Below, in pieces: positions 13,259 to 60,512 of a DNA stretch of 64,000 nt. Made by a program: the position numbers and the translations under genes. Location of the stretch: positions 153,606-217,605 of IMG/VR virus record IMGVR_UViG_3300046543_000266. One strand, 5' to 3'. The notes under the pieces were generated by a model. That model was not told the origin of the DNA. It saw only the letters and a list, made by a program, of their open reading frames with translations, and made no database searches. How positions within the stretch are numbered: the first letter of the stretch is position 1; each line of letters starts with the position of its first letter.

Positions 13259-14812
13259 TTACTCTTCTGCGTCGTCGTCCATGGACTTCGACTTCTTCTG
13301 GTTGCGTTTCGCTACGTACAACTCTTCGCCAACGCCGGAAGCCAACTGGCGGAAGCACCACGAACGCAGATTCATAGGCTTGTAACCCATGCGGTTCGAA
13401 TGCTCGGTCATCTTGGCCTTGTCGCCGAGGACCCATTCCTTGAGTTGCGCCCAGCTGATGACCTTCTTACCAGCGCCCAGACCCTTGAGGTCGATATACA
13501 TATTTTTCCGATTCTTGCCGGTGAGCTGGCCCGTCTGGCGGAGATAGTACACCGTGTCGAAGAACGGGTCGAAACCGCGAGCTTCACCACTGCCGTCTTC
13601 TTCCCACAAGCGAACGAAGCCCATACGACCCGGCGTCCACAGCTTGTTCTTGATAGCCTTGAACCGGACGTAGCGATAACGGTCGGTGCCCTCTACTTCT
13701 ACCGACGGCTCGTGCTCGCGACGATCTTCCGCGTCGAACTTCGGATTGAACGGCAGGTTCGAGGCCAACGGCGTCCATTGGATACGCACGTCACTGTTGA
13801 AGCGCAGTGCCTGTCCACCCGGTTCTGCTTCCTTCGGACCGTACATCGCCATCGGAACAGCACGCAGCTGATTGATACCAATGACCGCGACCATCTTTGA
13901 TGCCAGACGACCCTTCACGCGCGGCAGATGCTTCGAGAACATACGCGCTTGCAACGCCAGCGAGTTGTCGCCGTCTTCCTTGTCGTTCGACGTCGGGTTC
14001 ATTGCCGGATACGAGTCGACCAAGATCAGAGCTTGCAGTGCTCCATCGGGTGCCGGGATCCAGATGCCCTTGCCGTACTTCTTGGACATCGTCTTGTCGG
14101 AATGGCTATCGAGCTTCGCCTTGTTTTCCTTCGTCTCGTCGAACACGAGCCACCACTTACCCGCGATGAACTTCTTGTCCGGCAGCTTCTGCAGCATGTC
14201 GTGCAACCAGTCGAAGAACTTCTCGCCGATGGTTTCCGCACGATAACGCACACGCGGAGCCACCGTCCACTTGCCGGTTTGCGCGTCCTTCTTGCCGAAC
14301 ACTTCCTTGATCGAGATCTTCGCGCCGCAGGTACGCAGAATGTTGGCGACGTAGGGCTTGGAGTTCTTGGTCGAACCTTCGTAGTCCGCCAGCCCGATGA
14401 TCGGGATGTTGGCGTTGATACCAGCGGCCATGATGTGCAGCGCGCCAGTAGTCTTACACGACTGTTCCGGGCCGAAGTGGGTGTACCATGCCGGGCGGAT
14501 ACCACCACCCTCGACGAGGTCCAGCGCCAGAATGCCGGTGGACATCGGCGGTACGTCTTCGAGCAAGTCGCTATCGAAGTCTTGACGGCGGCTGACGTCG
14601 TCGAGCGTATCCGAGTACAGACCAGCGACGTCGAAGGTTACTTCACCCTTCGCACCCTTCTTGCCACGAGGTGCCTTACCTACGACCGCTTCGATTGCTT
14701 CTTCGACTTCGTCTTGCTTGGCGCGGCGTGCTGGAGCTCGCTTGACTGCTGGCGCCTTCTTGGCTGCGACCTTACGGGCCGGAGCCTTAGCTACTGGCTT
14801 CTTTGTTGCCAT
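13259..14812 (-). CDS. recA: RecA/UvsX-like recombinase
   Basis: STGILALD, P-loop variant GPEQSCKT, LILVDSYPAM, INQLR, EPGGQALRFNSDVRI, KAIKNK. Start at ATG 14812. Confidence 0.92.
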   Translation of the reverse strand: MATKKPVAKAPARKVAAKKAPAVKRAPARRAKQDEVEEAIEAVVGKAPRGKKGAKGEVTFDVAGLYSDTLDDVSRRQDFDSDLLEDVPPMSTGILALDLVEGGGIRPAWYTHFGPEQSCKTTGALHIMAAGINANIPIIGLADYEGSTKNSKPYVANILRTCGAKISIKEVFGKKDAQTGKWTVAPRVRYRAETIGEKFFDWLHDMLQKLPDKKFIAGKWWLVFDETKENKAKLDSHSDKTMSKKYGKGIWIPAPDGALQALILVDSYPAMNPTSNDKEDGDNSLALQARMFSKHLPRVKGRLASKMVAVIGINQLRAVPMAMYGPKEAEPGGQALRFNSDVRIQWTPLASNLPFNPKFDAEDRREHEPSVEVEGTDRYRYVRFKAIKNKLWTPGRMGFVRLWEEDGSGEARGFDPFFDTVYYLRQTGQLTGKNRKNMYIDLKGLGAGKKVISWAQLKEWVLGDKAKMTEHSNRMGYKPMNLRSWCFRQLASGVGEELYVAKRNQKKSKSMDDDAEE

Positions 14813-14839
14813 GAGTTCTGTTCCTGGGAAGGGCAAATG

Positions 14840-14878
14840 AAAAGACCCGCCGCGAACGGTCATCTGTTCGGCGGCGGG
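14840..14878 (-). terminator. GC hairpin + U4 (terminator or 5' leader hairpin)
   Basis: CCCGCCGCCGAAC/GTTCGCGGCGGG stem followed by TCTTTTC on the minus strand. Confidence 0.55.
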
Positions 14879-14907
14879 CCCGAGGCTTCACGATGAGTTA
14901 CGTGAGC

Positions 14908-14915
14908 TATTTACT
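14908..14915 (-). promoter_or_regulatory. AGTAAATA motif (class 1 putative promoter)
   Basis: Intergenic, between SSB and recA. Confidence 0.6.
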
Positions 14916-14924
14916 ACTGACGCT

Positions 14925-16463
14925 TTAGCGACGTGCCTTCTTCACCGGAGCCTTCTTACGTGCGGGCGGCTCGTCGTCCTCGTCTTCATCTTCGTCGTCG
15001 AAGTCATCGTCATCTTCATCTTCTTCCTCGACGACCTTCTTGCTTTTGGCTGCCGTCTTCTTGGCGGGAGCCTTGGCTACCGGCTTCTTGGCACCCTTCT
15101 TGGGCGGCGGGGCTTCGTCTTCATCTTCGTCGTCGAAGTCATCTTCATCTTCGTCATCCGAATCTTCGTCCTCGTCCTCGTCTTCCTCGACGGCGGCCTT
15201 CTTGCCCTTGGCTACAGGCTTCTTCGCCGGGGCTTTCTTGGCACCCTTCTTCGGAGCCGGCTCGTCGTCTTCGTCTTCGTCTTCGTCCTCGTCGTCGAGA
15301 TCGTCGTCTTCGTCTTCCGAGTCTTGATCATCCTCGTCGTCCGAATCTTCGTCCTCGTCTTCATCATCGCCGAAGTCGTCCTCGTCTTCTTCGTCTTCCT
15401 CGACCTTCTTGCCCTTCTTGGCCGGTGCAGCCTTACCCTTCTTGGGCGGCGGTGCATCGTCCTCGTCTTCATCTTCGTCGTCGAAGTCATCGGACTCTTC
15501 GTCCTCGTCTTCTTCGTCTTCCTCAGCAGCCTTCTTGCCCTTGCCCTTTGCCGGAGCAGCCTTCTTGGCGGGAGCCGGTTTGCCCTTGCCCTTCTTCGGC
15601 GCCGGTTCGTCGTCCTCGTCCTCGTCTTCCTCGTCGAGGTCTTCGTCCTCTTCGTAGTCGTCTTCAGCAGCCTTCTTGCCCTTCGACTTCACCTTGATGC
15701 CCATGCGCTTTGCCCACGATTCGTAGTCACGCTTGGTTTCTTCTTCCGTCGATTCAGCAGCCAGATCCGACAGGTCCCACGTGAGGAATGCCAGTTCTTC
15801 TTCGGTCAGCGGCGAACGCTCGCCGATCTGCACGGAGTACTGCTCAGCCGGTGCCTTCGTGCTGTCGAACATGATACGCACGTCGCAACCGAACTTATCG
15901 TGGCTGACTGCGTAGGCCGTCGTGCTGCCAGTCTTCTTCGACGTTACCGTGTTGAGGGGCTTCAGTTCAGCCAGCTTGCGGATAGCGCCGCCCGGCAGTG
16001 CCAGAGCAACCCACGGTGTCCACGTTTCCGAGTCCTTGTCCTTGTGGCCCGACTTGCGTTCGGCAGCCGTCGGCTTCGGCAGACGCGACGGTTGCTGCTT
16101 CTGGGCAGCACGCGACAGAGCGTTGCAGTAGAACTTCTTTGCCACCTGAACCGTCTTCTTGTCGTTCTCGCGGATGTCTTCCTCTTCCTGCACGATTGCA
16201 TACCACGGATCGTACTTCGTGGTGTCGAACTGCTGCGTGTCCGGATCGTACGACGGGAAAGAGACCGGGAACTTCGTGGGCTTGCCGTCCTTCGTCTTCG
16301 TCTTGACCCAACCCGTTGCGTAGCTGAACGTCGGTCCGAAGAAGCGGAACGTCACCCACTTCTTTTCCGGGAACTTGAACAGGTTGATCTTGTCGGTGAT
16401 CTTCGGTTTGTCCGAACGGTTGCCAGTGCGGACGTTATCGAAATCTGTACCCTTTTGAGCCAT
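14925..16463 (-). CDS. gp32-like single-stranded DNA-binding protein with long charge-block tail
   Basis: N-terminal ~260-aa aromatic-rich domain (FRFFGP, KKFYCNAL, FGCDVRI, QYSVQ). Adjacent to recA. C-terminal ~250 aa of alternating D/E and K/P/A blocks. Confidence 0.6.
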   Translation of the reverse strand: MAQKGTDFDNVRTGNRSDKPKITDKINLFKFPEKKWVTFRFFGPTFSYATGWVKTKTKDGKPTKFPVSFPSYDPDTQQFDTTKYDPWYAIVQEEEDIRENDKKTVQVAKKFYCNALSRAAQKQQPSRLPKPTAAERKSGHKDKDSETWTPWVALALPGGAIRKLAELKPLNTVTSKKTGSTTAYAVSHDKFGCDVRIMFDSTKAPAEQYSVQIGERSPLTEEELAFLTWDLSDLAAESTEEETKRDYESWAKRMGIKVKSKGKKAAEDDYEEDEDLDEEDEDEDDEPAPKKGKGKPAPAKKAAPAKGKGKKAAEEDEEDEDEESDDFDDEDEDEDDAPPPKKGKAAPAKKGKKVEEDEEDEDDFGDDEDEDEDSDDEDDQDSEDEDDDLDDEDEDEDEDDEPAPKKGAKKAPAKKPVAKGKKAAVEEDEDEDEDSDDEDEDDFDDEDEDEAPPPKKGAKKPVAKAPAKKTAAKSKKVVEEEDEDDDDFDDEDEDEDDEPPARKKAPVKKARR

Positions 16464-18744: not shown

Positions 18745-19218
18745 TTAATAGTCGGCTACTGCGGTGTGATAGCAAACGATGCCGCGTGCGCGCCACATAT
18801 CGACTACGCATTGACGATCGTCGAACGCCATGAACACGTCGGCCAAGTCGAAGCCCGCTTGCTGCACGATCCACGGCTTGTAGTCTTCGTCCGACATCTT
18901 CGCAAGACCGTGGAGGCCGGGCGGACGCATCAGCAGTTGATCGTTGGTGATCTTCGGGCCAACGTACTCGTGAATCTGGTGGAGCGTCATACCCCGATAC
19001 TCAGGACCGTCGCCACGGCTGGTAACGAACAGCATGTGGAACGCCGGATTGTCGTAGAAGGCGCGGTAGACGTGTGCTCCTTGTGGGATCACCGTGTCAT
19101 TGACCGTTGCCTTGATGTAGGCTTCACGATCACCCTTGAAGTAGTGGGCCGTGCGATGGCTGGAGTTGATGAGGCAGCCGTCCAGATCACAGATGACCAG
19201 CTTGATTGGTGCTTGCAT
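18745..19218 (-). CDS. HAD-family phosphatase (T4 PNK phosphatase-like)
   Basis: DLDGCL motif I, FVTSR, LLMRP, FDDRQCVVDMWRARG. Confidence 0.85.
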   Translation of the reverse strand: MQAPIKLVICDLDGCLINSSHRTAHYFKGDREAYIKATVNDTVIPQGAHVYRAFYDNPAFHMLFVTSRGDGPEYRGMTLHQIHEYVGPKITNDQLLMRPPGLHGLAKMSDEDYKPWIVQQAGFDLADVFMAFDDRQCVVDMWRARGIVCYHTAVADY

Positions 19219-19704: not shown

Positions 19705-19925
19705 GTTGGTTCCTTGGGTTGGAAGCGGTTCAATACTACGGCGGTTCCGTCAGCGCTAATACGTTGCCACACTAGCGCTTTCTCTTCGACGCTGAGGAAT
19801 ACCCAATTGTCTACTTCGAATTGGGTACGACCGCAGCCTTTGCATTTGGCGTCGAAGAGCGTGGAACACACGCCGATACATGGGGTGTCGAGTCCGTGCA
19901 TTACTTCATCCGGCGGCCGAGCCAC
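19701..19925 (-). CDS. DUF1289 family Cys-rich protein
   Basis: PCIGVCS...CKGCGRT..EV.NW. Confidence 0.8.
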   Translation of the reverse strand: MARPPDEVMHGLDTPCIGVCSTLFDAKCKGCGRTQFEVDNWVFLSVEEKALVWQRISADGTAVVLNRFQPKEPT

Positions 19926-21001
19926 ATGATACCGGCGGTCAGCCAGTCGTTGCCGAGCTTGGTGTCGAGGTCAAGCTGGAGGCACTGCTTGTTGTACGTG
20001 AGCAGAGCCAGACCGCTCGCCGTGTCGCCGGCCTTGTGCATGTTGTAAGCCCGAGCCATCGGCATTGCCACGTAGTCCAGGAACTGGTTCTCGTAGTCAC
20101 GGGGGTTCACCTGCTCGGTACACACCGTGACGAAGTCGCGCAGTTCGTCTTCGAATTCATCGCTGTCAGCTTGCAGCGGCAGCGGTGCCACGTCTTCGTC
20201 ATACCGACCTGGATAGGCCAGACCACCCTCGACCCCACGGAAGCCGTTGCCCGCGCGCTCGATGAACCGCTTTGTTACGTCGAACTCCGTGTAGATGTGC
20301 AGGTTGTTGGACACCTGATAGTAGTTGCCAACTTCGACGCCGATCTTGTTCGCCAGATATTCATGGAGGAACGCGAAGTGAACGGCGTTGGCGCCGTAGG
20401 CACCCCAGATCATGTCGTTGCTACGGTTCGTCACCGTGATATTGAGCTTGCCCTGACAGATGTCGACGTAGACCGCGGTATTGCACGGCAGGTCCTTCGA
20501 CGTCTGGTTCAGCAGATCCGACGGCTTATACTCGTTGTACATGCCGATGCCGCTTTCGTGCTCGACATCTTCGCCCTTGCCGTCCCACATGCTGATCACA
20601 CAGCGACGGCTGCCCGGATTCTTGCGCAGTTCGGCGATCACGGCGTCCAGCTGATCGTAGCCGAAGTGGTTGCGCCAGCGGAAGCCATACGCGCCGTTGA
20701 GCGTCTCACCGTCGTCGGTGTACTGGAGCATCTGCTTGGCATAGTAGCCGATGGTCGCCACGTCGTTGTTGCCATTCAGCATCCACATGCTTTCGATCAG
20801 GTGGAGGAACGGGTTGGCGTCGCGAGCCTTGCTGAACGACACACGGTGCATCGGGCTCGACCACATGGTCGTCACCGGACGGGGGAAGCGCAGGACCGGA
20901 CCGTTGCGGCTGTCGGTGACAACACCGTTGGCGAGGATCTGGGGGATGCCAATGCTGAGGGCATGGTCCGGGTTAGCTGCATGAATCACAAACATGAACA
21001 A
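19901..21001 (-). CDS. Thymidylate-synthase-fold dUMP hydroxymethylase (putative)
   Basis: DLPCN catalytic Cys, NRSNDMIWGAYGAN with Asn at the uracil-specifying position, SNNLHIY. Confidence 0.75.
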   Translation of the reverse strand: MFMFVIHAANPDHALSIGIPQILANGVVTDSRNGPVLRFPRPVTTMWSSPMHRVSFSKARDANPFLHLIESMWMLNGNNDVATIGYYAKQMLQYTDDGETLNGAYGFRWRNHFGYDQLDAVIAELRKNPGSRRCVISMWDGKGEDVEHESGIGMYNEYKPSDLLNQTSKDLPCNTAVYVDICQGKLNITVTNRSNDMIWGAYGANAVHFAFLHEYLANKIGVEVGNYYQVSNNLHIYTEFDVTKRFIERAGNGFRGVEGGLAYPGRYDEDVAPLPLQADSDEFEDELRDFVTVCTEQVNPRDYENQFLDYVAMPMARAYNMHKAGDTASGLALLTYNKQCLQLDLDTKLGNDWLTAGIMWLGRRMK

Positions 21002-21066: not shown

Positions 21067-22071
21067 TTAGGAGCCTTTGTAGCCGCTGCGAGGCTCGCCT
21101 TCACCGCTGATGACGCGGCAGTATTTGTCGTACTCGCACAGACAGTTGCTGAGGTTCGCTGCGCTCAGGTCGACGAAGCCCGTCTCGAAGCTACCGGACC
21201 ACCACTTCGGAGGCACGATCGTCTTCGCCAACTTGTTCATGTCGCGGCGCAGCTTGACCATCGGCTCGTTGAGAGCATTGCCGCGGACGTCGGCTTTACG
21301 ACCGCCGCTCATCACTCGGTTCATACCCCGCGTAGTGCCCGGTCCAGGACTAGTGAACGTCTCGATGTCCGTGGCATTCATCAGCCACTTCTGGCTGTAC
21401 GTCAGGTCGACGATAACCTGATATGCCATGAACGGTCCCCAACCTTGATACTCACGAAGGGTGGATACGGCCTCTTCCTGGGACTCCTTGAACTTACTGC
21501 GCAATTCCTTGCGATCCTTCCACAGCGGATCCAGCCCAAAGTACGGGATGTAGTAAGCCTTGCTGTTGTCCGGCGGGTTCGTGCCCTTCGGGAACACGCT
21601 GTTGACGATGTAGGCACCGGTGATCAGCTTCTGCTTCTCGTTCTTGATAGCGTTGAACGTGGCGTAGGCTTTCTTGGCACTCCAGCCGTCGACTGGGAAG
21701 CTACCTTCGTCCATCATGCGTTGCAGCGTATCCGGCCAGTTGATGATACGAGCCAGCGCCAGCATGAACCACAGGTCCGGATGGTTCTGGTACGGCGTGA
21801 TGATGTTGTCGATTATCCACTTGCTGACCGTGTCGAGCTCACGGTAGATGTTGCAGAAGCGGTAAGCGCGCAGCACTGGATCGTTGGTCCACGGCTTGGC
21901 CTTGCCTACGTGATAGCGCTTCAGGTAGATAGAGTGGCGCTCGATCCAGAACTTCGTGATCGACTCTACCTTGTTTTGATCTTCGGGCTGGAACAGATAG
22001 GGCAGCTTCTTCGGAGCCGCCGCTGGCTGATCAAACAGACTGCCTTGACTGGCGTTTGTTTTGCGCTTCAT
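21067..22071 (-). CDS. 5-hmdU DNA kinase (aGPT-Pplase1 family)
   Basis: ERHSIYLKR..G...PWTNDPVLRAYRFCNIYRELD signature, GWGPFMAYQ, LSNCLCEYDKY. Start at ATG 22071 with ATGA overlap. Confidence 0.8.
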   Translation of the reverse strand: MKRKTNASQGSLFDQPAAAPKKLPYLFQPEDQNKVESITKFWIERHSIYLKRYHVGKAKPWTNDPVLRAYRFCNIYRELDTVSKWIIDNIITPYQNHPDLWFMLALARIINWPDTLQRMMDEGSFPVDGWSAKKAYATFNAIKNEKQKLITGAYIVNSVFPKGTNPPDNSKAYYIPYFGLDPLWKDRKELRSKFKESQEEAVSTLREYQGWGPFMAYQVIVDLTYSQKWLMNATDIETFTSPGPGTTRGMNRVMSGGRKADVRGNALNEPMVKLRRDMNKLAKTIVPPKWWSGSFETGFVDLSAANLSNCLCEYDKYCRVISGEGEPRSGYKGS

Positions 22072-22376
22072 TTGAATAAGCCTCGTGTTCTTTGATTGGC
22101 AATCGTTGCCAGATACGTACCGTGACAGCGCTTGGGATTGCACCAACATCCGAGACGCTGTCCTTTTAAATCACGGCGGATCTCGTCTCGGGTTGGTGGC
22201 GTTTCTCCGTTAGGTGCTTCGAGCAATCCGTCTAGCCACTTCATGTGCTTGTCGCAGCATTCGGTACGCGTGCCGTGAACGCCGACCACAAAGGGATTGC
22301 CGTACTTCTGAGGCCTCCCGATGTAGACGTCGTATTCGGATCGCTCGCAGTGGACAACCAACGGATGGTTCGTCAT
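22068..22376 (-). CDS. DUF4326 family protein
   Basis: VVHC...DVYIGRP.KYGNPF...LGCWCNP..CHG. ATGA overlaps at both ends. Confidence 0.8.
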   Translation of the reverse strand: MTNHPLVVHCERSEYDVYIGRPQKYGNPFVVGVHGTRTECCDKHMKWLDGLLEAPNGETPPTRDEIRRDLKGQRLGCWCNPKRCHGTYLATIANQRTRGLFK

Positions 22377-23167
22377 AGCAGGAAGTGTTCGGCTTCGATT
22401 GCACGAGTGCGCCAGTACATGCACTGGTCACCGAGCGACATGTTGCGAATGTCGTCTTCGGAATAGTACCCGAGCACCTTGCGCGCCAGCGTGTCCACGG
22501 TATGTGCGTGGGTTGTACCCCTATTTACGCTGCCGACCATTTCGTAGCCGAAGAGCTTGAAATCGCGCTCGTACAGACGGTTGATCAGGCCCAGAACATC
22601 TTCGTCCAGTTCTTCGATTTTCAGCTTCGGACCAGTCGGATACTTCGTCTGATCCTTCGAGTGGCCGAACTCTTCGGTTTCCACGCCGATCATTTCACGC
22701 ACCGTTTTCCAGTCGGCATCAAGGCGCTCGTAGCGGCCGATGAAGTCAGCGTAGCACTTGTTGCCTTGATAGAAGAAGTAATGCTGCGGGCAGAAGTGCG
22801 TGTACTTCCAGTCGAAGCGCACACTTACTTCGTTCAGATTGCGGCGCGCGAATTCGTTGAAGTCGGCATCGGCCGGCAGATTGTGTTGGCGCTTGTGCTC
22901 GGCCCACGAACTGATGAGACGAGTGTACGGATCACGCACGAAGCCGAACTTGAAGTACTCCTCGAAGTAGTGATGGGGCCACACTGCCGGGATGTCGGCA
23001 ACGCACACGTGGAACACTTCGATCACACGTTCGAGCTTGGGAATGAACGACTGGTAGTCCAGCTTCAGCGGGTTGCTGTCATACTGGAAGAGGGTGCGGC
23101 GAATCGACGTTCCTGCAACCTTTGGGTTGTGCAAAAACATGAACTTGTTTTGGTCACTGATGATCAT
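22373..23167 (-). CDS. PAPS-dependent sulfotransferase (Sulfotransfer_2 / carbohydrate sulfotransferase-like)
   Basis: 5'-PSB loop FLHNPKVAGTS, 3'-PB motif FVRDPYTRLIS, DFIGRYERLDADW. Confidence 0.85.
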   Translation of the reverse strand: MIISDQNKFMFLHNPKVAGTSIRRTLFQYDSNPLKLDYQSFIPKLERVIEVFHVCVADIPAVWPHHYFEEYFKFGFVRDPYTRLISSWAEHKRQHNLPADADFNEFARRNLNEVSVRFDWKYTHFCPQHYFFYQGNKCYADFIGRYERLDADWKTVREMIGVETEEFGHSKDQTKYPTGPKLKIEELDEDVLGLINRLYERDFKLFGYEMVGSVNRGTTHAHTVDTLARKVLGYYSEDDIRNMSLGDQCMYWRTRAIEAEHFLL

Positions 23168-24077
23168 TGAGCAGTCTCTTGAGGTATTCGCGGTCTTTGT
23201 TTTGAAACGCCAGTTCGGCCTTCAGTAGTAATTTACCCTTCTCGCGGAACTTGGCGCGCTTTTCTTTGTCTTTGAACAGGCCCGGTGCGTTCATGAAGTC
23301 GACGCGCAGGAAGGACGCAACGTGCTGAGCTTGCTTGCCGCGCTTGATCAAACCTGGGAACATCACCATCTGGCGCAGGAACGAGTCGTGGACATGCTGG
23401 ACCTTGCGCTCGCTGCCTGCACCACCTTGATCTTTCGGGTCGAAGGTGGTGTTCCACAGCATGTGATAGTCGACGACCGAACGATAGCCGTTGCACAGCA
23501 CCGCCAGATTGTGAACTGTGTCGATGCCCCACAGATCGCGCGTTTCCTTCTTGTCGATGCAGTGCAGCAGGATGTTCACATCGTAGCCCGCGACGTTGGT
23601 ACACTTGTGATTCTTGCGCTCCAGTCCCCAACGTTCGATGATGTTCTTGTGCATGAAGTAAGCGCCAGCGCCGACCAGCGCGTTACCCTTGCGGAACAGT
23701 TGCGGAGCCCTCTTCAGGAACCACTCGTCCGCAGCGCTGATGTCTTTGGTTGCGCCCACGTACTTGTCACCACGACGACCGTAGAACAGCATGTCGTCCT
23801 CTATCACCATTGCGAACTTGGCCCCCTGCTTGCGATGATGATCGAACACCGAGTAGCGCTTGTTCGGCAGCAGGATGTCGTCCTTGGTGCGCAAGAAGTC
23901 CACGTGCTTGGCGTAGGCTTCCTTCTTGTGGGCCGCATGCTCTGAGGCCGGGCACACCACTGTGATGTGCTTCTGCACTTCAGGGGACAGGTAGGACAGC
24001 GTCTTCTGCCGTCCTACTCGCCCCTTGGTCAGCAGGTAGATGTGGTAGTCTTTATCCATATGATACGTAGGTTCCAA
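23154..24077 (-). CDS. GT-A glycosyltransferase (TET-associated/GREB1/base-J GT-like), paralog 3
   Basis: LLTKGR..Q.TL...VVCPASE, KR..V, VIEDDMLF. Confidence 0.65.
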   Translation of the reverse strand: MEPTYHMDKDYHIYLLTKGRVGRQKTLSYLSPEVQKHITVVCPASEHAAHKKEAYAKHVDFLRTKDDILLPNKRYSVFDHHRKQGAKFAMVIEDDMLFYGRRGDKYVGATKDISAADEWFLKRAPQLFRKGNALVGAGAYFMHKNIIERWGLERKNHKCTNVAGYDVNILLHCIDKKETRDLWGIDTVHNLAVLCNGYRSVVDYHMLWNTTFDPKDQGGAGSERKVQHVHDSFLRQMVMFPGLIKRGKQAQHVASFLRVDFMNAPGLFKDKEKRAKFREKGKLLLKAELAFQNKDREYLKRLLNDHQ

Positions 24078-24570
24078 CCCACCCTTTATGGTGTTCTTTT
24101 ATACCGCCGCAGACGGCCTTCATGCAAGAGTAGTCTAGACCGTGAATGCGGCATAGACCCCTGAGATTGTTTCCAATGTAGCTCACCCAACGTGGAGAAG
24201 TCACGTGGTAGCCGCGCGCCAGCTTGTTGCCAATCTCCACATCACCGCCGTTGAGGGCGCGCTCCGACAAGTTCTGAGCGGTTGTGATGAACCGGCAGTT
24301 ACCCCAGACGTAATCACCGACGTCACCGAGGCGACCCATCTGGAATTCGGATACTGCCTTTCCGATCTGATCGGGGTGTTTTATACCGGCACGTTTCGCG
24401 AGCTTCATGTACTGGCGGAAGGTCAGCAAACAGACGCAACCACGACGACTAGCATTTCCGCGTAGATCGCGCCATTTCCTTCGCCATTGAAACCAGTAGC
24501 TCTGATCGAAGCTGAGCTTCTGCAGCACACCACAAGCTTCCTCTTCAGTTAGAACACGATCCCGAGTCAT
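24052..24570 (-). CDS. Free-standing HNH-like homing endonuclease
   Basis: MGRLGDVGDYVWGNCRFITTAQN beta-beta-alpha-like motif. Paralog of 39780..40397. Confidence 0.6.
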   Translation of the reverse strand: MTRDRVLTEEEACGVLQKLSFDQSYWFQWRRKWRDLRGNASRRGCVCLLTFRQYMKLAKRAGIKHPDQIGKAVSEFQMGRLGDVGDYVWGNCRFITTAQNLSERALNGGDVEIGNKLARGYHVTSPRWVSYIGNNLRGLCRIHGLDYSCMKAVCGGIKEHHKGWVGTYVSYG

Positions 24571-25337
24571 TAGACCAGCCCTCCGATTTTAGCAGCACCC
24601 CTCCAACTGATGCGAGTGTTGGAATCCGGGTGTTGGGCCGATGGCGGCTTTTCCTTCACGACATCGGGGTGCAGCTTGAGCAGCTTCTGCAGCGCAGCCT
24701 TCGCCATATCACGGGTACGTTCACCTTCTAGCCCACCTGGAGCGTCGGCCTTACGCTGCGCCACCGCCATGTCGTACGTGAGGGCGATTCGCGTTCCACC
24801 CTTGAGTAGTTGGAGCGTGTAGTCTATGTCCTCGTACGGAAATAAACGATCCCACACGATCTTCTTTACGGTGCCGCGGGACATGCCGAAGGCGAATCCT
24901 AGATGGCTGTTCTCTTTGATACCACCCTTCGGCGCGAAAGCCTTGGTCCCGAGCCCGACGCACTTGTAGCGCGAGCACAGGTCCGGAAGCACCTTGGTCC
25001 AGAAGCCCTTGGTCACTTCGGGAACCGTCGACGCCACGACGTGCTTGTCCTGCTCCTTATCGAAGGCATACAGGTACAGATCGTCGTCGAACATGAACGC
25101 GTACTTGTGCGGGCTGTTCTCCATGATCCACTGGCGCTTGGCACTCAGCGTCTGGATGGACTTCGGCTGCGCCAGCACGTTGACCTTCGGGTAGTTGGCC
25201 TTGAGGATAACGACTTCATCCTTGGGGCATACCAGAGTGACGTGACCGTGCATTCCCTTAGGCAACCGCTCGACCGTCAGCTGGTTGGCAGTACGGCCCC
25301 GCGTTGGGATGTAGATATGATAGTTGATCTTGGACAT
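24570..25337 (-). CDS. GT-A glycosyltransferase (TET-associated/GREB1/base-J GT-like), paralog 2
   Basis: YIPTRGR..QLT, LVCPKDE, KRQWI, MFDDDL, YEDIDYTLQLL. Confidence 0.7.
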   Translation of the reverse strand: MSKINYHIYIPTRGRTANQLTVERLPKGMHGHVTLVCPKDEVVILKANYPKVNVLAQPKSIQTLSAKRQWIMENSPHKYAFMFDDDLYLYAFDKEQDKHVVASTVPEVTKGFWTKVLPDLCSRYKCVGLGTKAFAPKGGIKENSHLGFAFGMSRGTVKKIVWDRLFPYEDIDYTLQLLKGGTRIALTYDMAVAQRKADAPGGLEGERTRDMAKAALQKLLKLHPDVVKEKPPSAQHPDSNTRISWRGAAKIGGLV

Positions 25338-26071
25338 CAGAAGCGAGCCTCGTTTCTGCGTTGGAATTCCGCCAGATGCTCAGGCGTACCCAGATTGGTG
25401 AACTGACGGGTCTCGAAGTACCGCAGCGGCAGTCGTGTGATCCCGTTGATGACGGCGCTCAGTGGCAGTTCGGCATAAGGCTTTCTGTTGCGCTCGGCTT
25501 CAAGGAACGCATCCGCCATGTCGTCCACGTTACGGAACCAGTAGCAGCCAGTGTTGATGTAGTCGGAGATCCGCAGCTTCTCGGACAGACCATGGAACAC
25601 GGCAGTCTTACGCCACGCCGAATGATACTTGGCTGGATTGTTCAGGAAAGAGTACTCTTCCGACCCGCTCTTGTCTTCGTAGGCAATGACGCCGGAGCTG
25701 CCCTCGATGACTGCTTCGGTCATGGTGTACTTGAGGTCGACGTGTGCCGAGCAGTCACAGTCGAAGATGATGACCGGTCCTTCACGCGGTGGATCGCACA
25801 TCAACGCCAGAGCCATCGCGCTGAATGCCGGACCCGGCGAAACGTCTTCGAGATAGTGGACGGCCTTGAAGGTATCCCCGTACTGTGCGAGCAGCTCCTC
25901 GTCCTTGCGCAGGATCAGGATCTCGACGTCCGACGGTTCCAGCCCATACGAGTCGATAACCCATCGGTACATCGGGACGCCCGGAAGTACTTCGATGAAC
26001 GGCTTGCTGACCGGGAATCCCTGCTCCCGGAAGCGTGAGCCCATTCCGGCGGCGGACATTAGATAGCGCAT
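25337..26071 (-). CDS. Sugar-phosphate nucleotidyltransferase-like protein
   Basis: AAGMGSRF.....SKPFI, GPAFSA, FDCD, INTGCYWF, LGTPE. Confidence 0.75.
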   Translation of the reverse strand: MRYLMSAAGMGSRFREQGFPVSKPFIEVLPGVPMYRWVIDSYGLEPSDVEILILRKDEELLAQYGDTFKAVHYLEDVSPGPAFSAMALALMCDPPREGPVIIFDCDCSAHVDLKYTMTEAVIEGSSGVIAYEDKSGSEEYSFLNNPAKYHSAWRKTAVFHGLSEKLRISDYINTGCYWFRNVDDMADAFLEAERNRKPYAELPLSAVINGITRLPLRYFETRQFTNLGTPEHLAEFQRRNEARF

Positions 26072-27597
26072 GATTGCTGTTCCATGAGTTGGTATATTTC
26101 TTGGCCCTTCTTGAACAGAGCCAGTTGTCGTTGCAGCGAATCGCTGTGTAGCGGCAGCATTGAGAAGAACAGCAGCGCAGTCATCGCCAGCACTTCTTGG
26201 AAGTCGATACCGAAGCGCTCCCGAACTACGACGCTGAAGTAACTAATGACCTCACGGTTCAGCGGAGGCGGGTTGATTGCCGAGACACTGTAGTGCCCGG
26301 CGATAATCGAGTCGTAGCCAACCATCGAGTGCAGCAGCTTTGCCAACTCGTAGCGGACGTCGCCGTATATGGAGCGCTCGTCGAATCCGTTGAGGCCGCG
26401 CGGGTCAAACACCTTGATGCTATTAGTGCGATGGTCATACGCGATGTTGCTGAAGCACAGGTCACCATGAACTACCGAGATACGGTCAGGGCGATCGGGT
26501 ATCTGTGCGATGCAGTGCTCGGACAATGCCGTAAGCTCAGGCACAATCTCCGAGAAGGTGTCGGACTGGCCGCTGGACTGACCACTGAGTTGTAGCTGCT
26601 GGATGCGCTGGCGAGTCTTACCTTCGATGAGCTCACGGAACGCCGCCGCTTCATGCAGGACGGTCTCTGAGTCGATATGGTGTCCCGGGTCACCACCAAT
26701 GAAGTCGAGGCACTTGTCGATGATGGTGTGCCACACACCAAACTCTTGATTGCCGAACACGTACAGTTCAGCCAGCGTCGGCAGCGGCAGGTACTCGATC
26801 TCGTAGGATCCGTAGCAGTCGTACGACAGCAGGGCCGGAGTGTACTTACGCAGCTTGACTGGGAGGTTGCTGTACCAATCGAACTCAGCGTGGATCTTGG
26901 CTGGAGTACCACTCTTACTCACCACGTTGTCTTCGATGCGAAGTTGGTTGAAATGCCGCGACGTCAGGAAGTTCTGCTTGGACAGGAAGTAGGTAGCAGC
27001 GTGTCCGAAGTCAAACCAGTCGACGCCGTCCGTATAGTCCTGATAGGTTACGGCGACTTCGTCGTGAATCCAATCCAGGGCTTCACTGATATCGTCGTCA
27101 GGTGCTATCACACGCGCTACCGTGTTGAGCGGAGCCATGAAGTATCCGATGAACACAGCATTGCGGCCGTTATCCAAGCGTATATCCAACCAGTTGAAGT
27201 TACCCGGACGGGTCGCAGCCACCCCGATGCACGGAGTGGTCGCCCACTTGCTGATCAGTGTATCGCCCCACAGAACGTGTAGTTCCACACCCTCACAGTT
27301 TCGAGCACCGTTCAAGTGGTTCACTATCCTGGTCACCGCATAGTACAGAACGTGCGACAACGGACGTGGGTGCTTGGACGAGTACTCACTTAACATGGTC
27401 ACGCGATCATCGCACGGCGGCATCGGGAAATCTTCCGGATGTGTGACAAATACCTTGTCGAAGTCTGCACCCATCTTCAGCTGATGTTGGATCAACGACT
27501 TGCCAGCTACCGGAATGCGTGAGGCGGGCAGCTTACCGAACATGAACTGAAGCTCGGGGTTGCACAGCGCTGAAGACAGGATAAGCAGGACCTTCAT
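26059..27597 (-). CDS. Nucleotidyltransferase-like + APH/choline-kinase-like fusion (capsule-biosynthesis-type)
   Basis: N-terminal FGKLPASRIPVAG, WFDFGH, C-terminal VVHGDLCFSNI and KVFDPRG kinase motifs. Start at ATG 27597. Confidence 0.75.
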   Translation of the reverse strand: MKVLLILSSALCNPELQFMFGKLPASRIPVAGKSLIQHQLKMGADFDKVFVTHPEDFPMPPCDDRVTMLSEYSSKHPRPLSHVLYYAVTRIVNHLNGARNCEGVELHVLWGDTLISKWATTPCIGVAATRPGNFNWLDIRLDNGRNAVFIGYFMAPLNTVARVIAPDDDISEALDWIHDEVAVTYQDYTDGVDWFDFGHAATYFLSKQNFLTSRHFNQLRIEDNVVSKSGTPAKIHAEFDWYSNLPVKLRKYTPALLSYDCYGSYEIEYLPLPTLAELYVFGNQEFGVWHTIIDKCLDFIGGDPGHHIDSETVLHEAAAFRELIEGKTRQRIQQLQLSGQSSGQSDTFSEIVPELTALSEHCIAQIPDRPDRISVVHGDLCFSNIAYDHRTNSIKVFDPRGLNGFDERSIYGDVRYELAKLLHSMVGYDSIIAGHYSVSAINPPPLNREVISYFSVVVRERFGIDFQEVLAMTALLFFSMLPLHSDSLQRQLALFKKGQEIYQLMEQQSCAI

Positions 27598-27629
27598 TAT
27601 GACCTCGGATTGTTGTGGGCGTACTACCC

Positions 27630-27637
27630 TATTTACT
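27630..27637 (-). promoter_or_regulatory. AGTAAATA motif
   Basis: Overlaps the TAA of the upstream GT gene. Confidence 0.55.
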
Positions 27638-28511
27638 TCTGGCTGGCAGCATAGCATTTCTGCCAGTAGATGATGACTTCCTTGCGGGAGATGCTCTCTT
27701 TGTACTTACGGTCCACCACCTTGACGAACGGCTCGTGCGCACGCGCCAGCTTGACCGCAGCGATGTCCGAGCGCTTGATCGTCCGCTCTTCGAATGCCCC
27801 ACCCTTTGCCCCGTAGGACAGCGGGTTGACTACGAAGTTGTTCATGATTAGATTGGGGATGCCGCGCTTGAGCAGATGCAAGGTCACGTTGAAGTCTTCG
27901 CGGAACTTGATCTCGTCGAAGCGGATGTCGTTGTCGAGTAGCGTGCGGCGGTGATGACCCATCGCGTGCATGGCGCGACCGGCTTCCATGGTTTCCTTGC
28001 GCTGCCGATTGTTGTTCTGCCGTGAAGCAATGCAGGTATGCCGATACTCACGTTCGAGCATGGCATCACGGATGAAGTCGAAGCGGCGGATCTTCTGCTC
28101 GTCGGTGAAGCCGTCCTTGAACAGGAACAGCACACCCTTCTTCTTGTACTCAGGCAGCACATCCCACTGCACCTTCTTGGGGTCGAAGGCTCGATACTTC
28201 TTGTTGCAGCGCCGGAAGAAGTACATGTCGTCGTCCATCTGGAAGATGTTGTCCGACTTGACGTTCTCGATGATCCACTGGCGCTTCTTGGCGATGCCGT
28301 CCACCGTCGGATCGTCGATAGCGTACACCAGATCGTGTTTATACTTCTTCTTTAAGGCCCGCGCATCTTCGAGGGTCGAAGTAATGAGCAGTACCTTGGC
28401 ACGCAGTTCTTCGGGGATGCCCAAGAACGTCACTTGGCGATCCACCCGTTGATGCGTTGGTATGACCAGCTGAAAGTCTTTATCAGCCACGAGGAGTCTG
28501 TTCTTGAACAT
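27633..28511 (-). CDS. GT-A glycosyltransferase (TET-associated/GREB1/base-J GT-like), paralog 1
   Basis: VIPTHQR..Q.T, KRQWI, QMDDDMYF, REDFNVTLHLLKRG, GAKGG. Confidence 0.7.
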   Translation of the reverse strand: MFKNRLLVADKDFQLVIPTHQRVDRQVTFLGIPEELRAKVLLITSTLEDARALKKKYKHDLVYAIDDPTVDGIAKKRQWIIENVKSDNIFQMDDDMYFFRRCNKKYRAFDPKKVQWDVLPEYKKKGVLFLFKDGFTDEQKIRRFDFIRDAMLEREYRHTCIASRQNNNRQRKETMEAGRAMHAMGHHRRTLLDNDIRFDEIKFREDFNVTLHLLKRGIPNLIMNNFVVNPLSYGAKGGAFEERTIKRSDIAAVKLARAHEPFVKVVDRKYKESISRKEVIIYWQKCYAASQK

Positions 28512-28522: not shown

Positions 28523-29227
28523 TTAGTAGGTGAGAACGAACTTGCGGAATCCGTCAGGTGTGTTCTCGATGGAAGGGTAGCCAGTGGCCTCGACGTTGTA
28601 CTTGGTGACGCCGTGCTCGACCGTGGTGGCGGGAACCATCAGACCACGCAGTTCGAAGTCGTCGAACAGATACTCTTCCATCGTGGCTGCGTTGATAACG
28701 CGCCACTGATTGGTGTGGCCGTCCGAATGCGTGTTGTACCGGATGTAGTACTTCTTGTGACCGGTCGTCACCACCTTGGCGATCTGACGTGCTTCCTTGT
28801 CGAACTCTTCGGCGCTCTCCAGATAGTTGCCGATCTGATAGTCCACCTCATCGTACTTGGGCGGCACGTACATCTTGTTCGTGTCCTCGAAGCGGCCCTT
28901 GTCGATGGTGTTCATCCACACCTTGAACACGTCGTCTGTGTGATCGAGGAACTGTTCTTGGAACGCGTTGCGCGTGGTTGCCAGCGGACACACGAAGTCG
29001 ACGATAACCCAATGGCCTTGGAAGTGCAGCATCCGAGCCAACTGACCGAGAGTGGTTGCTTGCTTGACGCGGTCCAGGTTGGAGAAGCCCAGATGCGACG
29101 TGATGGTGCTACGCGCCCAGTCAGCGTTGACGTGGATGGCGTTCAGCTTCTGTTGGAGAACCTTTGCCAACGTGGTCTTGCCGCTGCCGGGCAAACCCTG
29201 AATGAAGATGACTTTGTTTTGGCTCAT
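28523..29227 (-). CDS. cysC: Adenylylsulfate (APS) kinase-like protein with C-terminal extension
   Basis: GLPGSGKTTLA, NADWAR...LGFSNLDR, VDFVCPL, VWMNTI...FEDT...Y..P. Confidence 0.75.
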   Translation of the reverse strand: MSQNKVIFIQGLPGSGKTTLAKVLQQKLNAIHVNADWARSTITSHLGFSNLDRVKQATTLGQLARMLHFQGHWVIVDFVCPLATTRNAFQEQFLDHTDDVFKVWMNTIDKGRFEDTNKMYVPPKYDEVDYQIGNYLESAEEFDKEARQIAKVVTTGHKKYYIRYNTHSDGHTNQWRVINAATMEEYLFDDFELRGLMVPATTVEHGVTKYNVEATGYPSIENTPDGFRKFVLTY

Positions 29228-60023: not shown

Positions 60024-60034
60024 CGAGGAATCAA

Positions 60035-60175
60035 ATGAAAGCAGTCAAGAAGGTGCACACATCGCCCGACGAGTTTAACTCTGAGGGCTTCGACAAGGAC
60101 GGATTCCGACCTACCTACAGTGACGAGCGAACCAAAATCCGTGAGCGGGTACTACGTGAGCTGGCTAGTAAATAA
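60035..60175 (+). CDS. Small protein (46 aa)
   Basis: RBS GAGG, MKAVKKVHTSPDEF, read manually. Confidence 0.55.
   Translation: MKAVKKVHTSPDEFNSEGFDKDGFRPTYSDERTKIRERVLRELASK
60167..60174 (+). promoter_or_regulatory. AGTAAATA motif
   Basis: Overlaps a stop codon, upstream of DUF1653/Mre11 genes. Confidence 0.6.
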
Positions 60176-60209
60176 CACGGTCAACATACCTACACACCAA
60201 GGAGCCATC

Positions 60210-60512
60210 ATGCCCTACCAAATCGACACATCCACCAACGTCAAGACTGGCGAGTTCTTCCAACACTACAAGGGCGGCGTCTACGAGATTGTAACGCTGG
60301 CAATGAACGAGGGCGACGGCAAGACTATGGTCGTCTACAAGAACTGGGATGACGAGACCTTCGTCCGCCCGCTCGAAGAATTCGTCGCGGTGATGCCCGG
60401 TCTGCTAATGCCACCGGATACTCCGGTCCACCGCTTCAACCTCATCTGCGACAAGGCAGCACTGCGCGATCTGCAAGCGCACGAAGCAGCCAAGCGCTTG
60501 CGGGGCGTCTGA
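60210..60512 (+). CDS. DUF1653 family protein
   Basis: FQHYKGGVYEIV..A...MVVY...FVRPLEEF; RBS GGAG. Confidence 0.8.
   Translation: MPYQIDTSTNVKTGEFFQHYKGGVYEIVTLAMNEGDGKTMVVYKNWDDETFVRPLEEFVAVMPGLLMPPDTPVHRFNLICDKAALRDLQAHEAAKRLRGV

What the first reader, a model, noticed from the sequence alone, without database searches (positions are those of the whole stretch)
28523..29227. APS kinase heading the modification operon, with an extra ~70-aa C-terminal domain
Seen: a CysC-like P-loop protein as the first gene of the run, plus an unexplained tail (KKYYIRYNTHSDGHTNQWRV...). Established: APS kinase makes PAPS, the sulfotransferase donor. No ATP sulfurylase is visible in this window, so APS would come from the host or from elsewhere in the genome. 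Co-location supports a functional sulfation pathway rather than a stray metabolic gene.
Basis: partly seen in the sequence, partly recalled or inferred. Interest (0 to 1): 0.6.

Follow-up and report, generated by a model that had tools for sequence, protein, structure and literature searches.

The report
Divergent phage APS kinase, novel tail
A jumbo-phage gene encodes a stripped-down relative of the enzyme that makes the universal sulfate donor PAPS, fused to a small beta-domain with no known structural relative, and it always sits beside a sulfotransferase, which suggests the phage sulfates something, most likely its modified DNA.

Summary
The ORF at 28523-29227 (-) is real: 234 aa, in a complete 217.6-kb relative of Ralstonia phage phiRSL1. 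Residues 1-153 are a P-loop kinase. By sequence, profile and predicted fold its nearest characterised relatives are all APS kinases. It keeps the P-loop, the catalytic Asp, and the Arg/Phe/Arg trio that holds APS. It belongs to a distinct short-lid subfamily: LDGD reads NAD, and the lid Lys and second Phe are missing. It scores far below NCBI's apsK cut-off.

Residues 158-233 form a confidently modelled, strongly conserved all-beta domain with no convincing PDB match. That domain is rare. It occurs alone, fused to this kinase subfamily, or once fused to a small NMNAT-like nucleotidyltransferase that usually partners the kinase elsewhere.

All 10 distinct loci carrying the kinase+beta-domain have a sulfotransferase within 5.6 kb, from two families, whether the cluster is glycosyl-hydroxymethylpyrimidine or 7-deazaguanine type. 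Bacterial members also neighbour sulfotransferases.

Best reading (about 0.65): a PAPS-supplying APS kinase using host APS, since the phage has no sulfurylase. "Heading the operon" is not shown. phiRSL1's homologue is already annotated as an APS kinase.

The parts
28523..29227 (-). Whole ORF (234 aa plus stop): short-lid APS-kinase-like domain fused to a C-terminal beta-domain
28769..29227 (-). Kinase domain, residues 1-153 (five-stranded P-loop fold, C-terminal helix at 139-153)
   Evidence: Pfam APS_kinase 3.9e-15. Foldseek top hits are all APS kinases, TM by target up to 0.85. The subfamily profile hits 26 APS kinases in the PDB at 1e-16 to 1e-7.
29171..29197 (-). Walker A / P-loop GLPGSGKTT (residues 11-19). 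K17 and T18 correspond to Mtb CysC K456 and S457.
   Evidence: PMC4373884
29111..29128 (-). NADWAR (residues 34-39), taking the place of LDGDxxR. N34 replaces the Mg-water Asp; D36 (near the 3'-OH) and R39 (phosphosulfate) are kept.
   Evidence: Alignment. Invariant. NAD in 24 of 25 subfamily members against DGD in canonical ones. Residue roles from PMC4373884 and PMC8528679.
29069..29092 (-). LGFSNLDR (residues 46-53). F48 corresponds to the adenine-stacking Phe492, and R53 to the Arg497 that binds sulfate and adenine N1.
28877..28897 (-). GRFEDTN (residues 111-117), a remodelled and shortened lid. N117 aligns with the lid Lys562. About 17 lid residues, including Phe576, are absent.
   Evidence: Alignment; conservation; PMC4373884
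28529..28756 (-). C-terminal all-beta domain (residues 158-233) with signature R-x-N-T ... W-R ... K-x-N-V
   Evidence: Modelled alone at pLDDT 91.3. No PDB match: Foldseek E > 0.2 and VIA best Z 3.2. Only 69 relatives among 1.84 billion proteins.
22373..23167 (-). Sulfotransfer_2 family sulfotransferase, the presumed consumer of PAPS
   Evidence: Pfam 6.2e-24; PSB-like HNPKVAGTS motif
27633..28511 (-). TAGT-family DNA-base glycosyltransferase, 11 bp downstream of the kinase. Two more lie at 24570-25337 and 23154-24077.
   Evidence: Pfam TAGT and phrog_842
18745..19218 (-). HAD_PNKP-type 3'-phosphatase-like protein, a candidate PAP phosphatase (inference only). Present in 9 of 10 kinase+tail loci.
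   Evidence: Pfam 7.2e-12; co-occurrence

Best explanation
The gene encodes a divergent, short-lid APS (adenylyl-sulfate) kinase. It phosphorylates the 3'-OH of APS taken from the host's ATP sulfurylase, producing PAPS for the phage's own sulfotransferase. In this cluster that sulfotransferase most likely sulfates sugars attached by the TAGT glycosyltransferases to hydroxymethylpyrimidines in phage DNA.

The fused C-terminal beta-domain is an accessory module specific to this kinase system. Because it has many invariant polar and aromatic residues, and the kinase lid is truncated, I infer that it helps close or complete the active site, or docks a partner.

Shown: homology, fold, motif retention, and gene association. 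Inferred: APS as substrate, host origin of APS, DNA-linked sugar as the sulfate acceptor, and the role of the tail.
For: (1) Pfam APS_kinase at 3.9e-15. All 22 best PDB sequence hits are APS kinases. A profile of the subfamily hits 26 APS kinases at 1e-16 to 1e-7, while other kinases match only the P-loop.

(2) The AF2 model (pLDDT 93) has APS kinases as its top structural hits, TM by target 0.62-0.85.

(3) Residues that in Mtb CysC hold APS and catalyse transfer are invariant here: K17, T18, D36 (=D480), R39 (=R483), F48 (=F492), R53 (=R497), and the V79-C80-P81 backbone site.

(4) All 10 distinct kinase+tail loci have a sulfotransferase within 0-5.6 kb. Six have Sulfotransfer_2 (window, phiRSL1, L009, L010, L018, L019). 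Four have an unrelated Stf0-like family immediately downstream (L007, L008, L021, L022), inside 7-deazaguanine clusters in the two whose neighbours were examined (L007, L008). The Stf0-like family looks like sulfotransferases both by language-model features (0.97) and by predicted structure (TM 0.54-0.60 to Stf0, Sulfotransfer_3 and NodH clusters).

(5) The kinase tracks the sulfotransferase and not the HMUDK_hel protein, which is absent within the 10-kb flanks of five of the ten loci.

(6) Subfamily members without the tail also neighbour sulfotransferases: phage loci L066, L034/L038 and L029; Inquilinus limosus, with an Arylsulfotran_2 gene adjacent and Sulfotransfer_3 3 kb away; and a SAR11 genome, with an overlapping Sulfotransfer_3/1 gene in a NeuB/PglD glycan island.

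(7) The phiRSL1 homologue (58% identity) is annotated as adenosine 5'-phosphosulfate kinase.
Against: - LDGD reads NAD throughout the subfamily. D87A at the equivalent Asp abolishes APS kinase activity in human PAPSS1 (PMC8528679); Asp-to-Asn has not been tested.
- The lid Lys562 aligns with Asn117, and the roughly 17-residue lid segment carrying the second stacking Phe576 is missing.
- The score is 52 bits against the NCBIfam apsK cut-off of 138.7.
- The complete phage genome has no Sat, no CysD and no small-NT homologue, so APS must come from the host. The host is unknown.
- Most relatives are fused to, or adjacent to, an NMNAT-like nucleotidyltransferase. This would equally fit NAD- or CoA-type chemistry.
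- The sulfotransferase family next to the Inquilinus member (ASST) is, from general knowledge, PAPS-independent.
- There is no biochemical evidence.
Confidence: 0.65

Rival explanations
1. It phosphorylates the adenosine ribose of another adenylylated metabolite, in an NAD-to-NADP-like or dephospho-CoA-to-CoA-like step, or some new ADP-X compound. On this reading the subfamily's ancestral job is tied to the NMNAT-like nucleotidyltransferase rather than to sulfate.
For: In about 40 phage loci and about 23 bacterial loci (mostly Pelagibacteraceae), the kinase is fused to or abuts a roughly 120-aa HxGH/ISxT nucleotidyltransferase. That transferase's best solved relatives are NadM/MJ0541 NMN adenylyltransferases. 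In one SAR11 locus the neighbours are CoA- and folate-related. The canonical lid and the first Asp of DGD are not conserved.
Against: The two arginines that bind the phosphosulfate in CysC are invariant. The jumbo-phage form has lost the nucleotidyltransferase entirely. It nevertheless keeps a strict 10/10 association with sulfotransferases from two families, and NAD or CoA chemistry does not explain that.
Confidence: 0.15
2. It is a kinase acting on the DNA polymer: a non-orthologous 5-hydroxymethyluracil DNA kinase working with the HMUDK_hel / aGPT-Pplase1 protein at 21067-22149, or a polynucleotide kinase paired with the HAD_PNKP phosphatase.
For: The genome has an HMUDK_hel protein (E = 3.8e-48) and a thymidylate-synthase-family hydroxymethylase, but no PF18748 5-HMUDK and no PF18724 transferase. 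In phage M6 relatives the P-loop 5-HMUDK lies next to the HMUDK_hel homologue. A HAD_PNKP phosphatase co-occurs in 9 of 10 loci.
Against: Only the P-loop aligns with the M6-type kinase, and PF18748 is not among the family hits. The kinase+tail persists in five loci that lack HMUDK_hel within the 10-kb flanks. The tail is near-neutral to acidic (mean net charge -0.7), unlike a typical DNA-binding domain. The APS-binding Arg/Phe/Arg trio is conserved.
Confidence: 0.07
3. It is a sugar or sugar-nucleotide kinase that feeds the glycosyl donors used by the TAGT transferases.
For: It lies beside three TAGT genes and two sugar-type nucleotidyltransferases. Gluconate and sugar kinases are the next-best structural matches after APS kinases.
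Against: The cluster already has an APH-like kinase fused to a nucleotidyltransferase (532 aa). The kinase+tail is also present in the L007 and L008 7-deazaguanine clusters, where no TAGT gene or sugar-type nucleotidyltransferase was detected. APS kinases outrank sugar kinases in every search.
Confidence: 0.05
4. It is a non-catalytic PAPS/APS-binding regulatory module, like the APS-kinase-like C-terminal domain of fungal ATP sulfurylase.
For: Substitutions at the first Asp of DGD and at the lid Lys could reduce catalysis.
Against: An intact Walker A, D36 and the nucleotide-contacting residues are invariant across hundreds of homologues. From general knowledge, the fungal regulatory domain has lost its P-loop signature.
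Confidence: 0.05

Closest known systems
Adenylyl-sulfate (APS) kinase CysC / APSK domain of PAPS synthase (Pfam PF01583; e.g. A. pernix APE1195 2yvu, M. tuberculosis CysC 4bzq/4rfv)
   Same: P-loop kinase fold. Walker A. The second Asp of LDGD. Arg483, Phe492 and Arg497 equivalents that bind the phosphosulfate and adenine of APS. An FISP-like strand end (FVCP). These are the best sequence and structure matches.
   Different: The first Asp of LDGD is Asn. The lid is about 17 residues shorter and lacks the Lys562 and Phe576 equivalents. There is an extra 76-aa beta-domain at the C-terminus. The score is far below the NCBIfam equivalog cut-off.
Ralstonia phage phiRSL1 ORF238 (YP_001950117.1), annotated 'adenosine 5'-phosphosulfate kinase'
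   Same: 58% identical over the full length including the tail. Same position in a syntenic cluster: TAGT x3, two nucleotidyltransferases, sulfotransferase, HMUDK_hel, thymidylate-synthase homologue.
   Different: The window's cluster has an HNH endonuclease inserted at 24052-24570. No experimental characterisation of ORF238 was found in the papers searched.
Sat-type ATP sulfurylase / bifunctional PAPS synthase (beta-barrel N-domain + HxxH nucleotidyltransferase + APS kinase domain; e.g. Aquifex 2gks, human PAPSS1)
   Same: The wider family shows an analogous three-module set: a small beta-domain, an HxGH nucleotidyltransferase and an APS-kinase-like domain. All three pairwise fusions occur.
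   Different: No detectable homology of the beta-domain or the small nucleotidyltransferase to Sat domains. In this phage the nucleotidyltransferase is absent. The parallel is one of architecture only.
5-hmdU DNA kinase of phages M6, ViI and phiW-14 (Pfam PF18748; Lee et al. 2021, PMC8989533)
   Same: A small phage P-loop kinase inside a thymidine-hypermodification-type cluster that also holds an HMUDK_hel / aGPT-Pplase1 protein.
   Different: Only the Walker A aligns. No PF18748 match was found anywhere in the genome.

Membership tests
APS kinase (CysC, PF01583 / TIGR00455) | Match to the family profile above the curated threshold | tested here: inconclusive
   The Pfam gathering score is passed (56.6 vs 21.1 bits). 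The NCBIfam equivalog apsK is failed (52.2 vs 138.7 bits), as are all CysC subfamily models.
APS kinase (CysC, PF01583 / TIGR00455) | P-loop kinase fold closest to solved APS kinases | tested here: met
   Foldseek top hits are 4rfv, 4bzp, 4fxp, 2yvu and 2ofx, E about 1e-9, TM by target 0.62-0.85.
APS kinase (CysC, PF01583 / TIGR00455) | Walker A GxxGxGK[ST] | tested here: met
   GLPGSGKTT at residues 11-19, invariant.
APS kinase (CysC, PF01583 / TIGR00455) | Invariant LDGD motif (both Asp required in hPAPSS1) | tested here: not met
   It reads V-N-A-D. The first Asp is Asn34 and the second Asp is kept as D36. NAD occurs in 24 of 25 subfamily genes against DGD in canonical ones (PMC8528679, PMC4373884).
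APS kinase (CysC, PF01583 / TIGR00455) | Two Arg binding the phosphosulfate and one Phe stacking the APS adenine (Mtb R483, R497, F492) | tested here: met
   R39, R53 and F48 align and are invariant.
APS kinase (CysC, PF01583 / TIGR00455) | Mobile lid carrying a Lys (K562) at the gamma-phosphate/2'-OH and a second stacking Phe (F576) | tested here: not met
   K562 aligns with invariant N117. The segment holding F576 (about 17 aa) is absent. This rests on the sequence alignment; model coordinates could not be inspected.
APS kinase (CysC, PF01583 / TIGR00455) | Converts APS + ATP to PAPS + ADP | not testable with these tools
   Needs an enzyme assay.
APS kinase (CysC, PF01583 / TIGR00455) | Genomic association with PAPS-consuming or sulfate-activating genes | tested here: met
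   A sulfotransferase lies within 5.6 kb in 10 of 10 kinase+tail loci, and next to several tail-less members. No sulfurylase is present in the phage.
5-hmdU DNA kinase (PF18748 HMUDK_HMUD1) | Match to PF18748 / similarity to M6 gp54-type kinase beyond the P-loop | tested here: not met
   No PF18748 match in the genome at E <= 1. BLASTP against an M6-type kinase aligns only 22 residues of the P-loop.
5-hmdU DNA kinase (PF18748 HMUDK_HMUD1) | Obligate co-occurrence with hydroxymethyl-dU pathway genes | tested here: not met
   The kinase+tail is present in five loci without an HMUDK_hel homologue within 10 kb.
T4-type polynucleotide kinase (Pnk) | Similarity to the Pnk kinase domain beyond the P-loop | tested here: not met
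   phrog_505 matches residues 4-44 only. No Pnk structures appear among the top fold or sequence hits.

The most novel reading that the evidence does not exclude
The short-lid kinase, the roughly 120-aa NMNAT-like nucleotidyltransferase and the roughly 75-aa beta-domain together form a previously unrecognised compact PAPS-synthesis system. On this reading the small transferase acts as a non-canonical ATP sulfurylase. The system is widespread in phages and is chromosomal in SAR11 bacteria, which lack Sat and CysDN yet carry PAPS-type sulfotransferases. In phiRSL1-like jumbo phages the kinase+beta-domain half has been recruited to put sulfate onto hypermodified DNA (glycosylated hydroxymethylpyrimidine or 7-deazaguanine derivatives). 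That would be a chemical group not yet reported in natural DNA.
Probability: 0.25. Interest if true: 0.85.

Novelty: new variant of a known kind. Interest (0 to 1): 0.55.

Why it matters
If the enzyme makes PAPS for the adjacent sulfotransferase, phiRSL1-like jumbo phages run a private sulfation pathway inside their DNA-modification clusters. In the literature searched here, sulfate has not been reported as a substituent of phage DNA hypermodifications. It would add strong negative charge and a new way of evading nucleases.

The protein also defines a minimal APS-kinase variant with a truncated lid, NAD in place of DGD, and a dedicated accessory domain. That variant tests which canonical features are really essential.

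The recurrent fusion of its relatives to a tiny nucleotidyltransferase offers a testable candidate for how genomes without known sulfurylases, such as SAR11, could still make PAPS.

Tried and rejected
- The tail as a known domain: Pfam gave only a non-significant Agenet hit (E = 0.18). Foldseek against the PDB gave nothing below E = 0.2. VIA-align over 48,161 chains gave a best Z of 3.2. The ESM Atlas shape search gave only hypothetical and DUF6748 clusters at TM <= 0.6. BFVD returned only the phiRSL1 homologue and uncharacterised phage proteins, two of them labelled DUF2061.
- The tail as a DNA-binding module: net charge about -0.7, so not supported.
- The Stf0-like neighbour family as a relative of the Sulfotransfer_2 genes: hhalign probability 0.3%, not significant. 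A PDB profile search gave no hits. Pfam gave only Sulfotransfer_4 at E = 0.2. Its sulfotransferase nature therefore rests on Atlas feature and structure look-alikes and on a P-loop-like QRTGSKS motif.
- The kinase as a 5-hmdU DNA kinase: rejected.
- Promoter or terminator at the gene start: none found.
- Drawing relatives of the viral record for host inference: not possible. L007's whole contig is not held.
- Literature on phiRSL1 sulfation or sulfated phage DNA: nothing found.
- Complex prediction, read laying and the look-up of sequencing runs were not used, because no claim here depends on them.

Full report
**Where the window comes from.** The window is bases 153606-217605 of a complete 217,605-bp viral contig with direct terminal repeats. 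It is a relative of Ralstonia jumbo phage phiRSL1, with about 73% nucleotide identity over parts of the cluster and the same gene order.

**The ORF and its neighbours.** The finding's ORF, 28523-29227 on the minus strand, is open and encodes 234 aa. It sits in a long run of minus-strand genes. Reading downstream from the kinase, the order is:
- a TAGT glycosyltransferase (27633-28511);
- a 532-aa nucleotidyltransferase / APH-like kinase fusion (26059-27657);
- a 244-aa protein (25337-26071) whose phiRSL1 counterpart is annotated as a nucleotidyl transferase; here it matches only phrog_3980, of unknown function;
- a second TAGT (24570-25337);
- an HNH endonuclease (24052-24570), which is absent from phiRSL1;
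- a third TAGT (23154-24077);
- a Sulfotransfer_2 protein (22373-23167);
- an HMUDK_hel / aGPT-Pplase1 protein (21067-22149);
- a thymidylate-synthase-family protein (19901-21001);
- a HAD_PNKP-type phosphatase (18745-19218).

**Is it the head of an operon?** The kinase is the first recognisable modification gene. It follows another co-directional ORF after 55 bp, and neither a promoter-like nor a terminator-like site marks its start. The nearest strong terminator-like hairpin is at 31732-31698, upstream of the peptidase gene. "Heading the operon" is therefore not established.

**The kinase domain: similarity to APS kinases.**
- Pfam APS_kinase matches residues 4-120 at 3.9e-15.
- The best 22 PDB sequence hits are all APS kinases; the top one is Aeropyrum APE1195, 2yvu, at 3.8e-11.
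- A profile built from 16 diverse members of the kinase subfamily hits 26 APS kinase sequences at 1e-16 to 1e-7. Other kinase families align only over the P-loop.
- An AlphaFold2 model built on 36 homologues has mean pLDDT 93.2 and pTM 0.82. Its best structural matches are again APS kinases, TM by target 0.62-0.85, ahead of gluconate kinase.

**The kinase domain: residue map.** I used the HMMER alignment to M. tuberculosis CysC and the residue roles described for that enzyme (PMC4373884).
- Retained: K17 and T18 (K456, S457), D36 (D480, next to the acceptor hydroxyl), R39 and R53 (R483 and R497, which bind the phosphosulfate), F48 (F492, which stacks on the APS adenine), and the V79-C80-P81 strand end (I523-S524-P525). 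All except C80, which varies between Cys and Asn, are invariant among homologues.
- Not retained: the first Asp of LDGD is Asn34, so the motif reads NAD. The lid Lys562 aligns with invariant Asn117. The roughly 17-residue lid segment carrying the second stacking Phe576 is missing.
- Significance of the Asp: in human PAPSS1 the D87A change at the equivalent first Asp abolishes kinase activity (PMC8528679). Asp-to-Asn has not been tested.
- Subfamily signature: NAD is present in 24 of 25 bacterial subfamily genes, whereas canonical relatives have DGD.
- Curated cut-offs: the protein scores 52 bits against the NCBIfam apsK cut-off of 138.7.

The protein is therefore APS-kinase-like. It keeps half of the APS site and has a remodelled lid. 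It is not a canonical CysC.

**The tail.**
- Structure: residues 158-233 form seven beta-strands after the last kinase helix (139-153). Modelled alone, the domain reaches pLDDT 91.3.
- Conservation: it is highly conserved, with invariant R163, N165, T166, W175, R176, E185, E204, K209 and N211.
- Charge: near-neutral, mean net charge -0.7.
- Known relatives: no Pfam family matches. There is no PDB match by Foldseek (E > 0.2) or by an exhaustive VIA-align pass (best Z 3.2). Atlas and BFVD searches return only uncharacterised proteins.
- Distribution: a profile search of 1.84 billion representative proteins found only 69 relatives. Most are stand-alone proteins of 72-130 aa. Five of the ten longer ones scanned carry the same APS-kinase-like domain in front, and the other five have no Pfam match. 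One (P0150, 191 aa) has the beta-domain fused to a small nucleotidyltransferase.

**The wider family.** The word search found 5,801 homologues. Outside the phiRSL1-like phages the kinase has no tail. In about 40 of 49 IMG/VR loci, in Xylella Salvo-type phages and in Stenotrophomonas phage DLP_6, it is fused to or immediately followed by a roughly 120-aa HxGH / ISxT nucleotidyltransferase. That transferase's best solved relatives are NadM-type NMN adenylyltransferases (E = 1e-4; Pfam CTP_transf_like at about the cut-off).
- In one phage group a 99-aa homologue of the tail is encoded right after the kinase-transferase fusion.
- All three pairwise fusions of kinase, transferase and beta-domain therefore exist, which argues that they work together.
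- The same kinase + transferase pair is chromosomal in many Pelagibacteraceae, in Inquilinus limosus and in a Hyphomicrobiaceae MAG.
- The window's own genome has no homologue of the small transferase.

**Association with sulfotransferases.** This is the strongest functional evidence. Ten distinct loci carry the kinase+tail: the window, phiRSL1, L007, L008 (=L024), L009 (=L023), L010, L018, L019, L021 and L022.
- Six have a Sulfotransfer_2 gene 1.1-5.6 kb downstream.
- Four have, directly abutting the kinase, a 278-295-aa family with no Pfam match.
- For that family, two members (39% identical to each other) score 0.97 against viral Stf0-sulfotransferase clusters by protein-language-model features. 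For one of them the Atlas model aligns at TM 0.54-0.60 over about 200 residues to Stf0, Sulfotransfer_3/1 and NodH clusters, and every named structural neighbour is a sulfotransferase. Sequence-profile tests were not significant.
- Of these four loci, the two whose neighbours were examined (L007, L008) lie in 7-deazaguanine clusters (QueC, QueD, QueE, FolE), not hydroxymethylpyrimidine/TAGT clusters. The other two (L021, L022) carry the same abutting Stf0-like gene. The kinase therefore follows the sulfotransferase across different modification chemistries.
- The HMUDK_hel protein is missing within the 10-kb flanks of five of the ten loci.
- Tail-less members are also next to sulfotransferase-like genes: phage loci L066, L034/L038 and L029, with FLHIPKTGGTS and RDPLDR motifs; Inquilinus limosus, with Arylsulfotran_2 adjacent and Sulfotransfer_3 3 kb away; and a SAR11 single-cell genome, where the short kinase overlaps the start of a Sulfotransfer_3/1 gene inside a NeuB/PglD glycan island.
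- Three SAR11 genomes have no Sat and no convincing CysD. Their only APS_kinase-family hit is this short kinase, yet they encode Sulfotransfer_3 proteins. These genomes are incomplete, so absence is not proven.

**Mechanism proposed.** The kinase domain binds MgATP at the P-loop and binds APS through R39, F48 and R53. It transfers the gamma-phosphate to the 3'-OH next to D36, giving PAPS. APS must come from the host's sulfurylase, because the complete phage genome has none. PAPS is used by the cluster's sulfotransferase. The acceptor is most plausibly a sugar placed on hydroxymethylated pyrimidines in DNA by the three TAGT enzymes; this is an inference from the gene content. The HAD_PNKP-type phosphatase, present in 9 of 10 loci, could remove the inhibitory by-product PAP; this too is inference only.

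I infer that the beta-domain, with its invariant Arg, Trp and Lys residues, compensates for the truncated lid or docks a partner. I could not inspect model coordinates, so this is a hypothesis.

**Rivals.**
- Another adenylylated substrate. This is suggested by the NMNAT-like partner in relatives and remains possible (about 0.15).
- A DNA 5-hmdU kinase. The genome has HMUDK_hel but no PF18748 kinase. However, only the P-loop aligns with the M6-type kinase, and the kinase+tail persists in loci without HMUDK_hel.
- Sugar kinase or non-catalytic regulator. Both are less likely.

**Novelty.** The phiRSL1 homologue (58% identity, same architecture) is already annotated as an APS kinase, so the basic call is not new. 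What is new here:
- recognition of a short-lid NAD-motif subfamily;
- the dedicated beta-domain, which has no known structural relative;
- the strict coupling to two sulfotransferase families across modification types;
- the three-module fusion network, which hints at a compact non-canonical PAPS-synthesis system.

No paper in the searched library describes sulfation in phage DNA hypermodification or characterises the phiRSL1 genes.

Noticed in passing
window 21067-22149 (-): A 360-aa HMUDK_hel / aGPT-Pplase1 homologue (E = 3.8e-48) is present. The complete genome nevertheless has no PF18748 5-hmdU DNA kinase and no PF18724 amino-acid:DNA transferase. Its role in a TAGT/sulfotransferase cluster is unexplained.
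   Followed up: partly
window 24052-24570 (-): An HNH-endonuclease-like ORF (phrog_2081, 1.5e-7) is inserted between the second and third TAGT genes. The syntenic phiRSL1 cluster has no gene there.
   Followed up: no
L007 9529-16692; L008 9507-16705 (relatives of the window's phage): At the same genomic position these jumbo phages carry a 7-deazaguanine cluster (QueD, QueC, QueE, FolE). It also holds a PRTase-like protein, a roughly 485-aa unknown protein and a Stf0-like sulfotransferase right after the kinase. This hints at a sulfated or otherwise elaborated deazaguanine modification.
   Followed up: partly
L011 8001-9055; L014 8001-8810; P0150; L079 7998-8778: The kinase subfamily, a roughly 120-aa NMNAT-like nucleotidyltransferase and the beta-domain occur in all pairwise fusions and as adjacent genes, in many phages and in Pelagibacteraceae chromosomes. 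Together they may form a compact PAPS-synthesis or other adenylyl-activation system.
   Followed up: partly
L090 4991-9489 (SAR11 single-cell genome): A glycan island contains NeuB, a PglD-like acetyltransferase and a pyruvate-kinase-barrel protein, followed by the short kinase overlapping a Sulfotransfer_3/1 gene. No small nucleotidyltransferase was detected in this locus.
   Followed up: no
window 18745-19218 (-): A HAD_PNKP-type phosphatase is conserved downstream of the modification cluster in 9 of 10 related loci. In L009 it lies directly after the kinase. It is a candidate PAP 3'-phosphatase, but this is untested.
   Followed up: partly
window 26059-27657 (-): A 532-aa protein (phrog_24015, 3e-96) has only weak APH/fructosamine-kinase similarity in its C-terminal half. 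Together with the 244-aa protein next to it, it is presumably a sugar-1-phosphate activation pair for the TAGT donors.
   Followed up: no
window 14001-16000 and 58001-64000: There is an unusually negative AT skew (-0.35) around 14-16 kb. The sign of the AT skew flips after about 58 kb, possibly marking a change of transcription direction near the genome end.
   Followed up: no
L066 4916-10534 (63.5-kb phage contig): A smaller phage carries a compact version of the same cluster: HMUDK_hel, TAGT, Sulfotransfer_2-like, TAGT, then a tail-less kinase 31% identical to the target.
   Followed up: no
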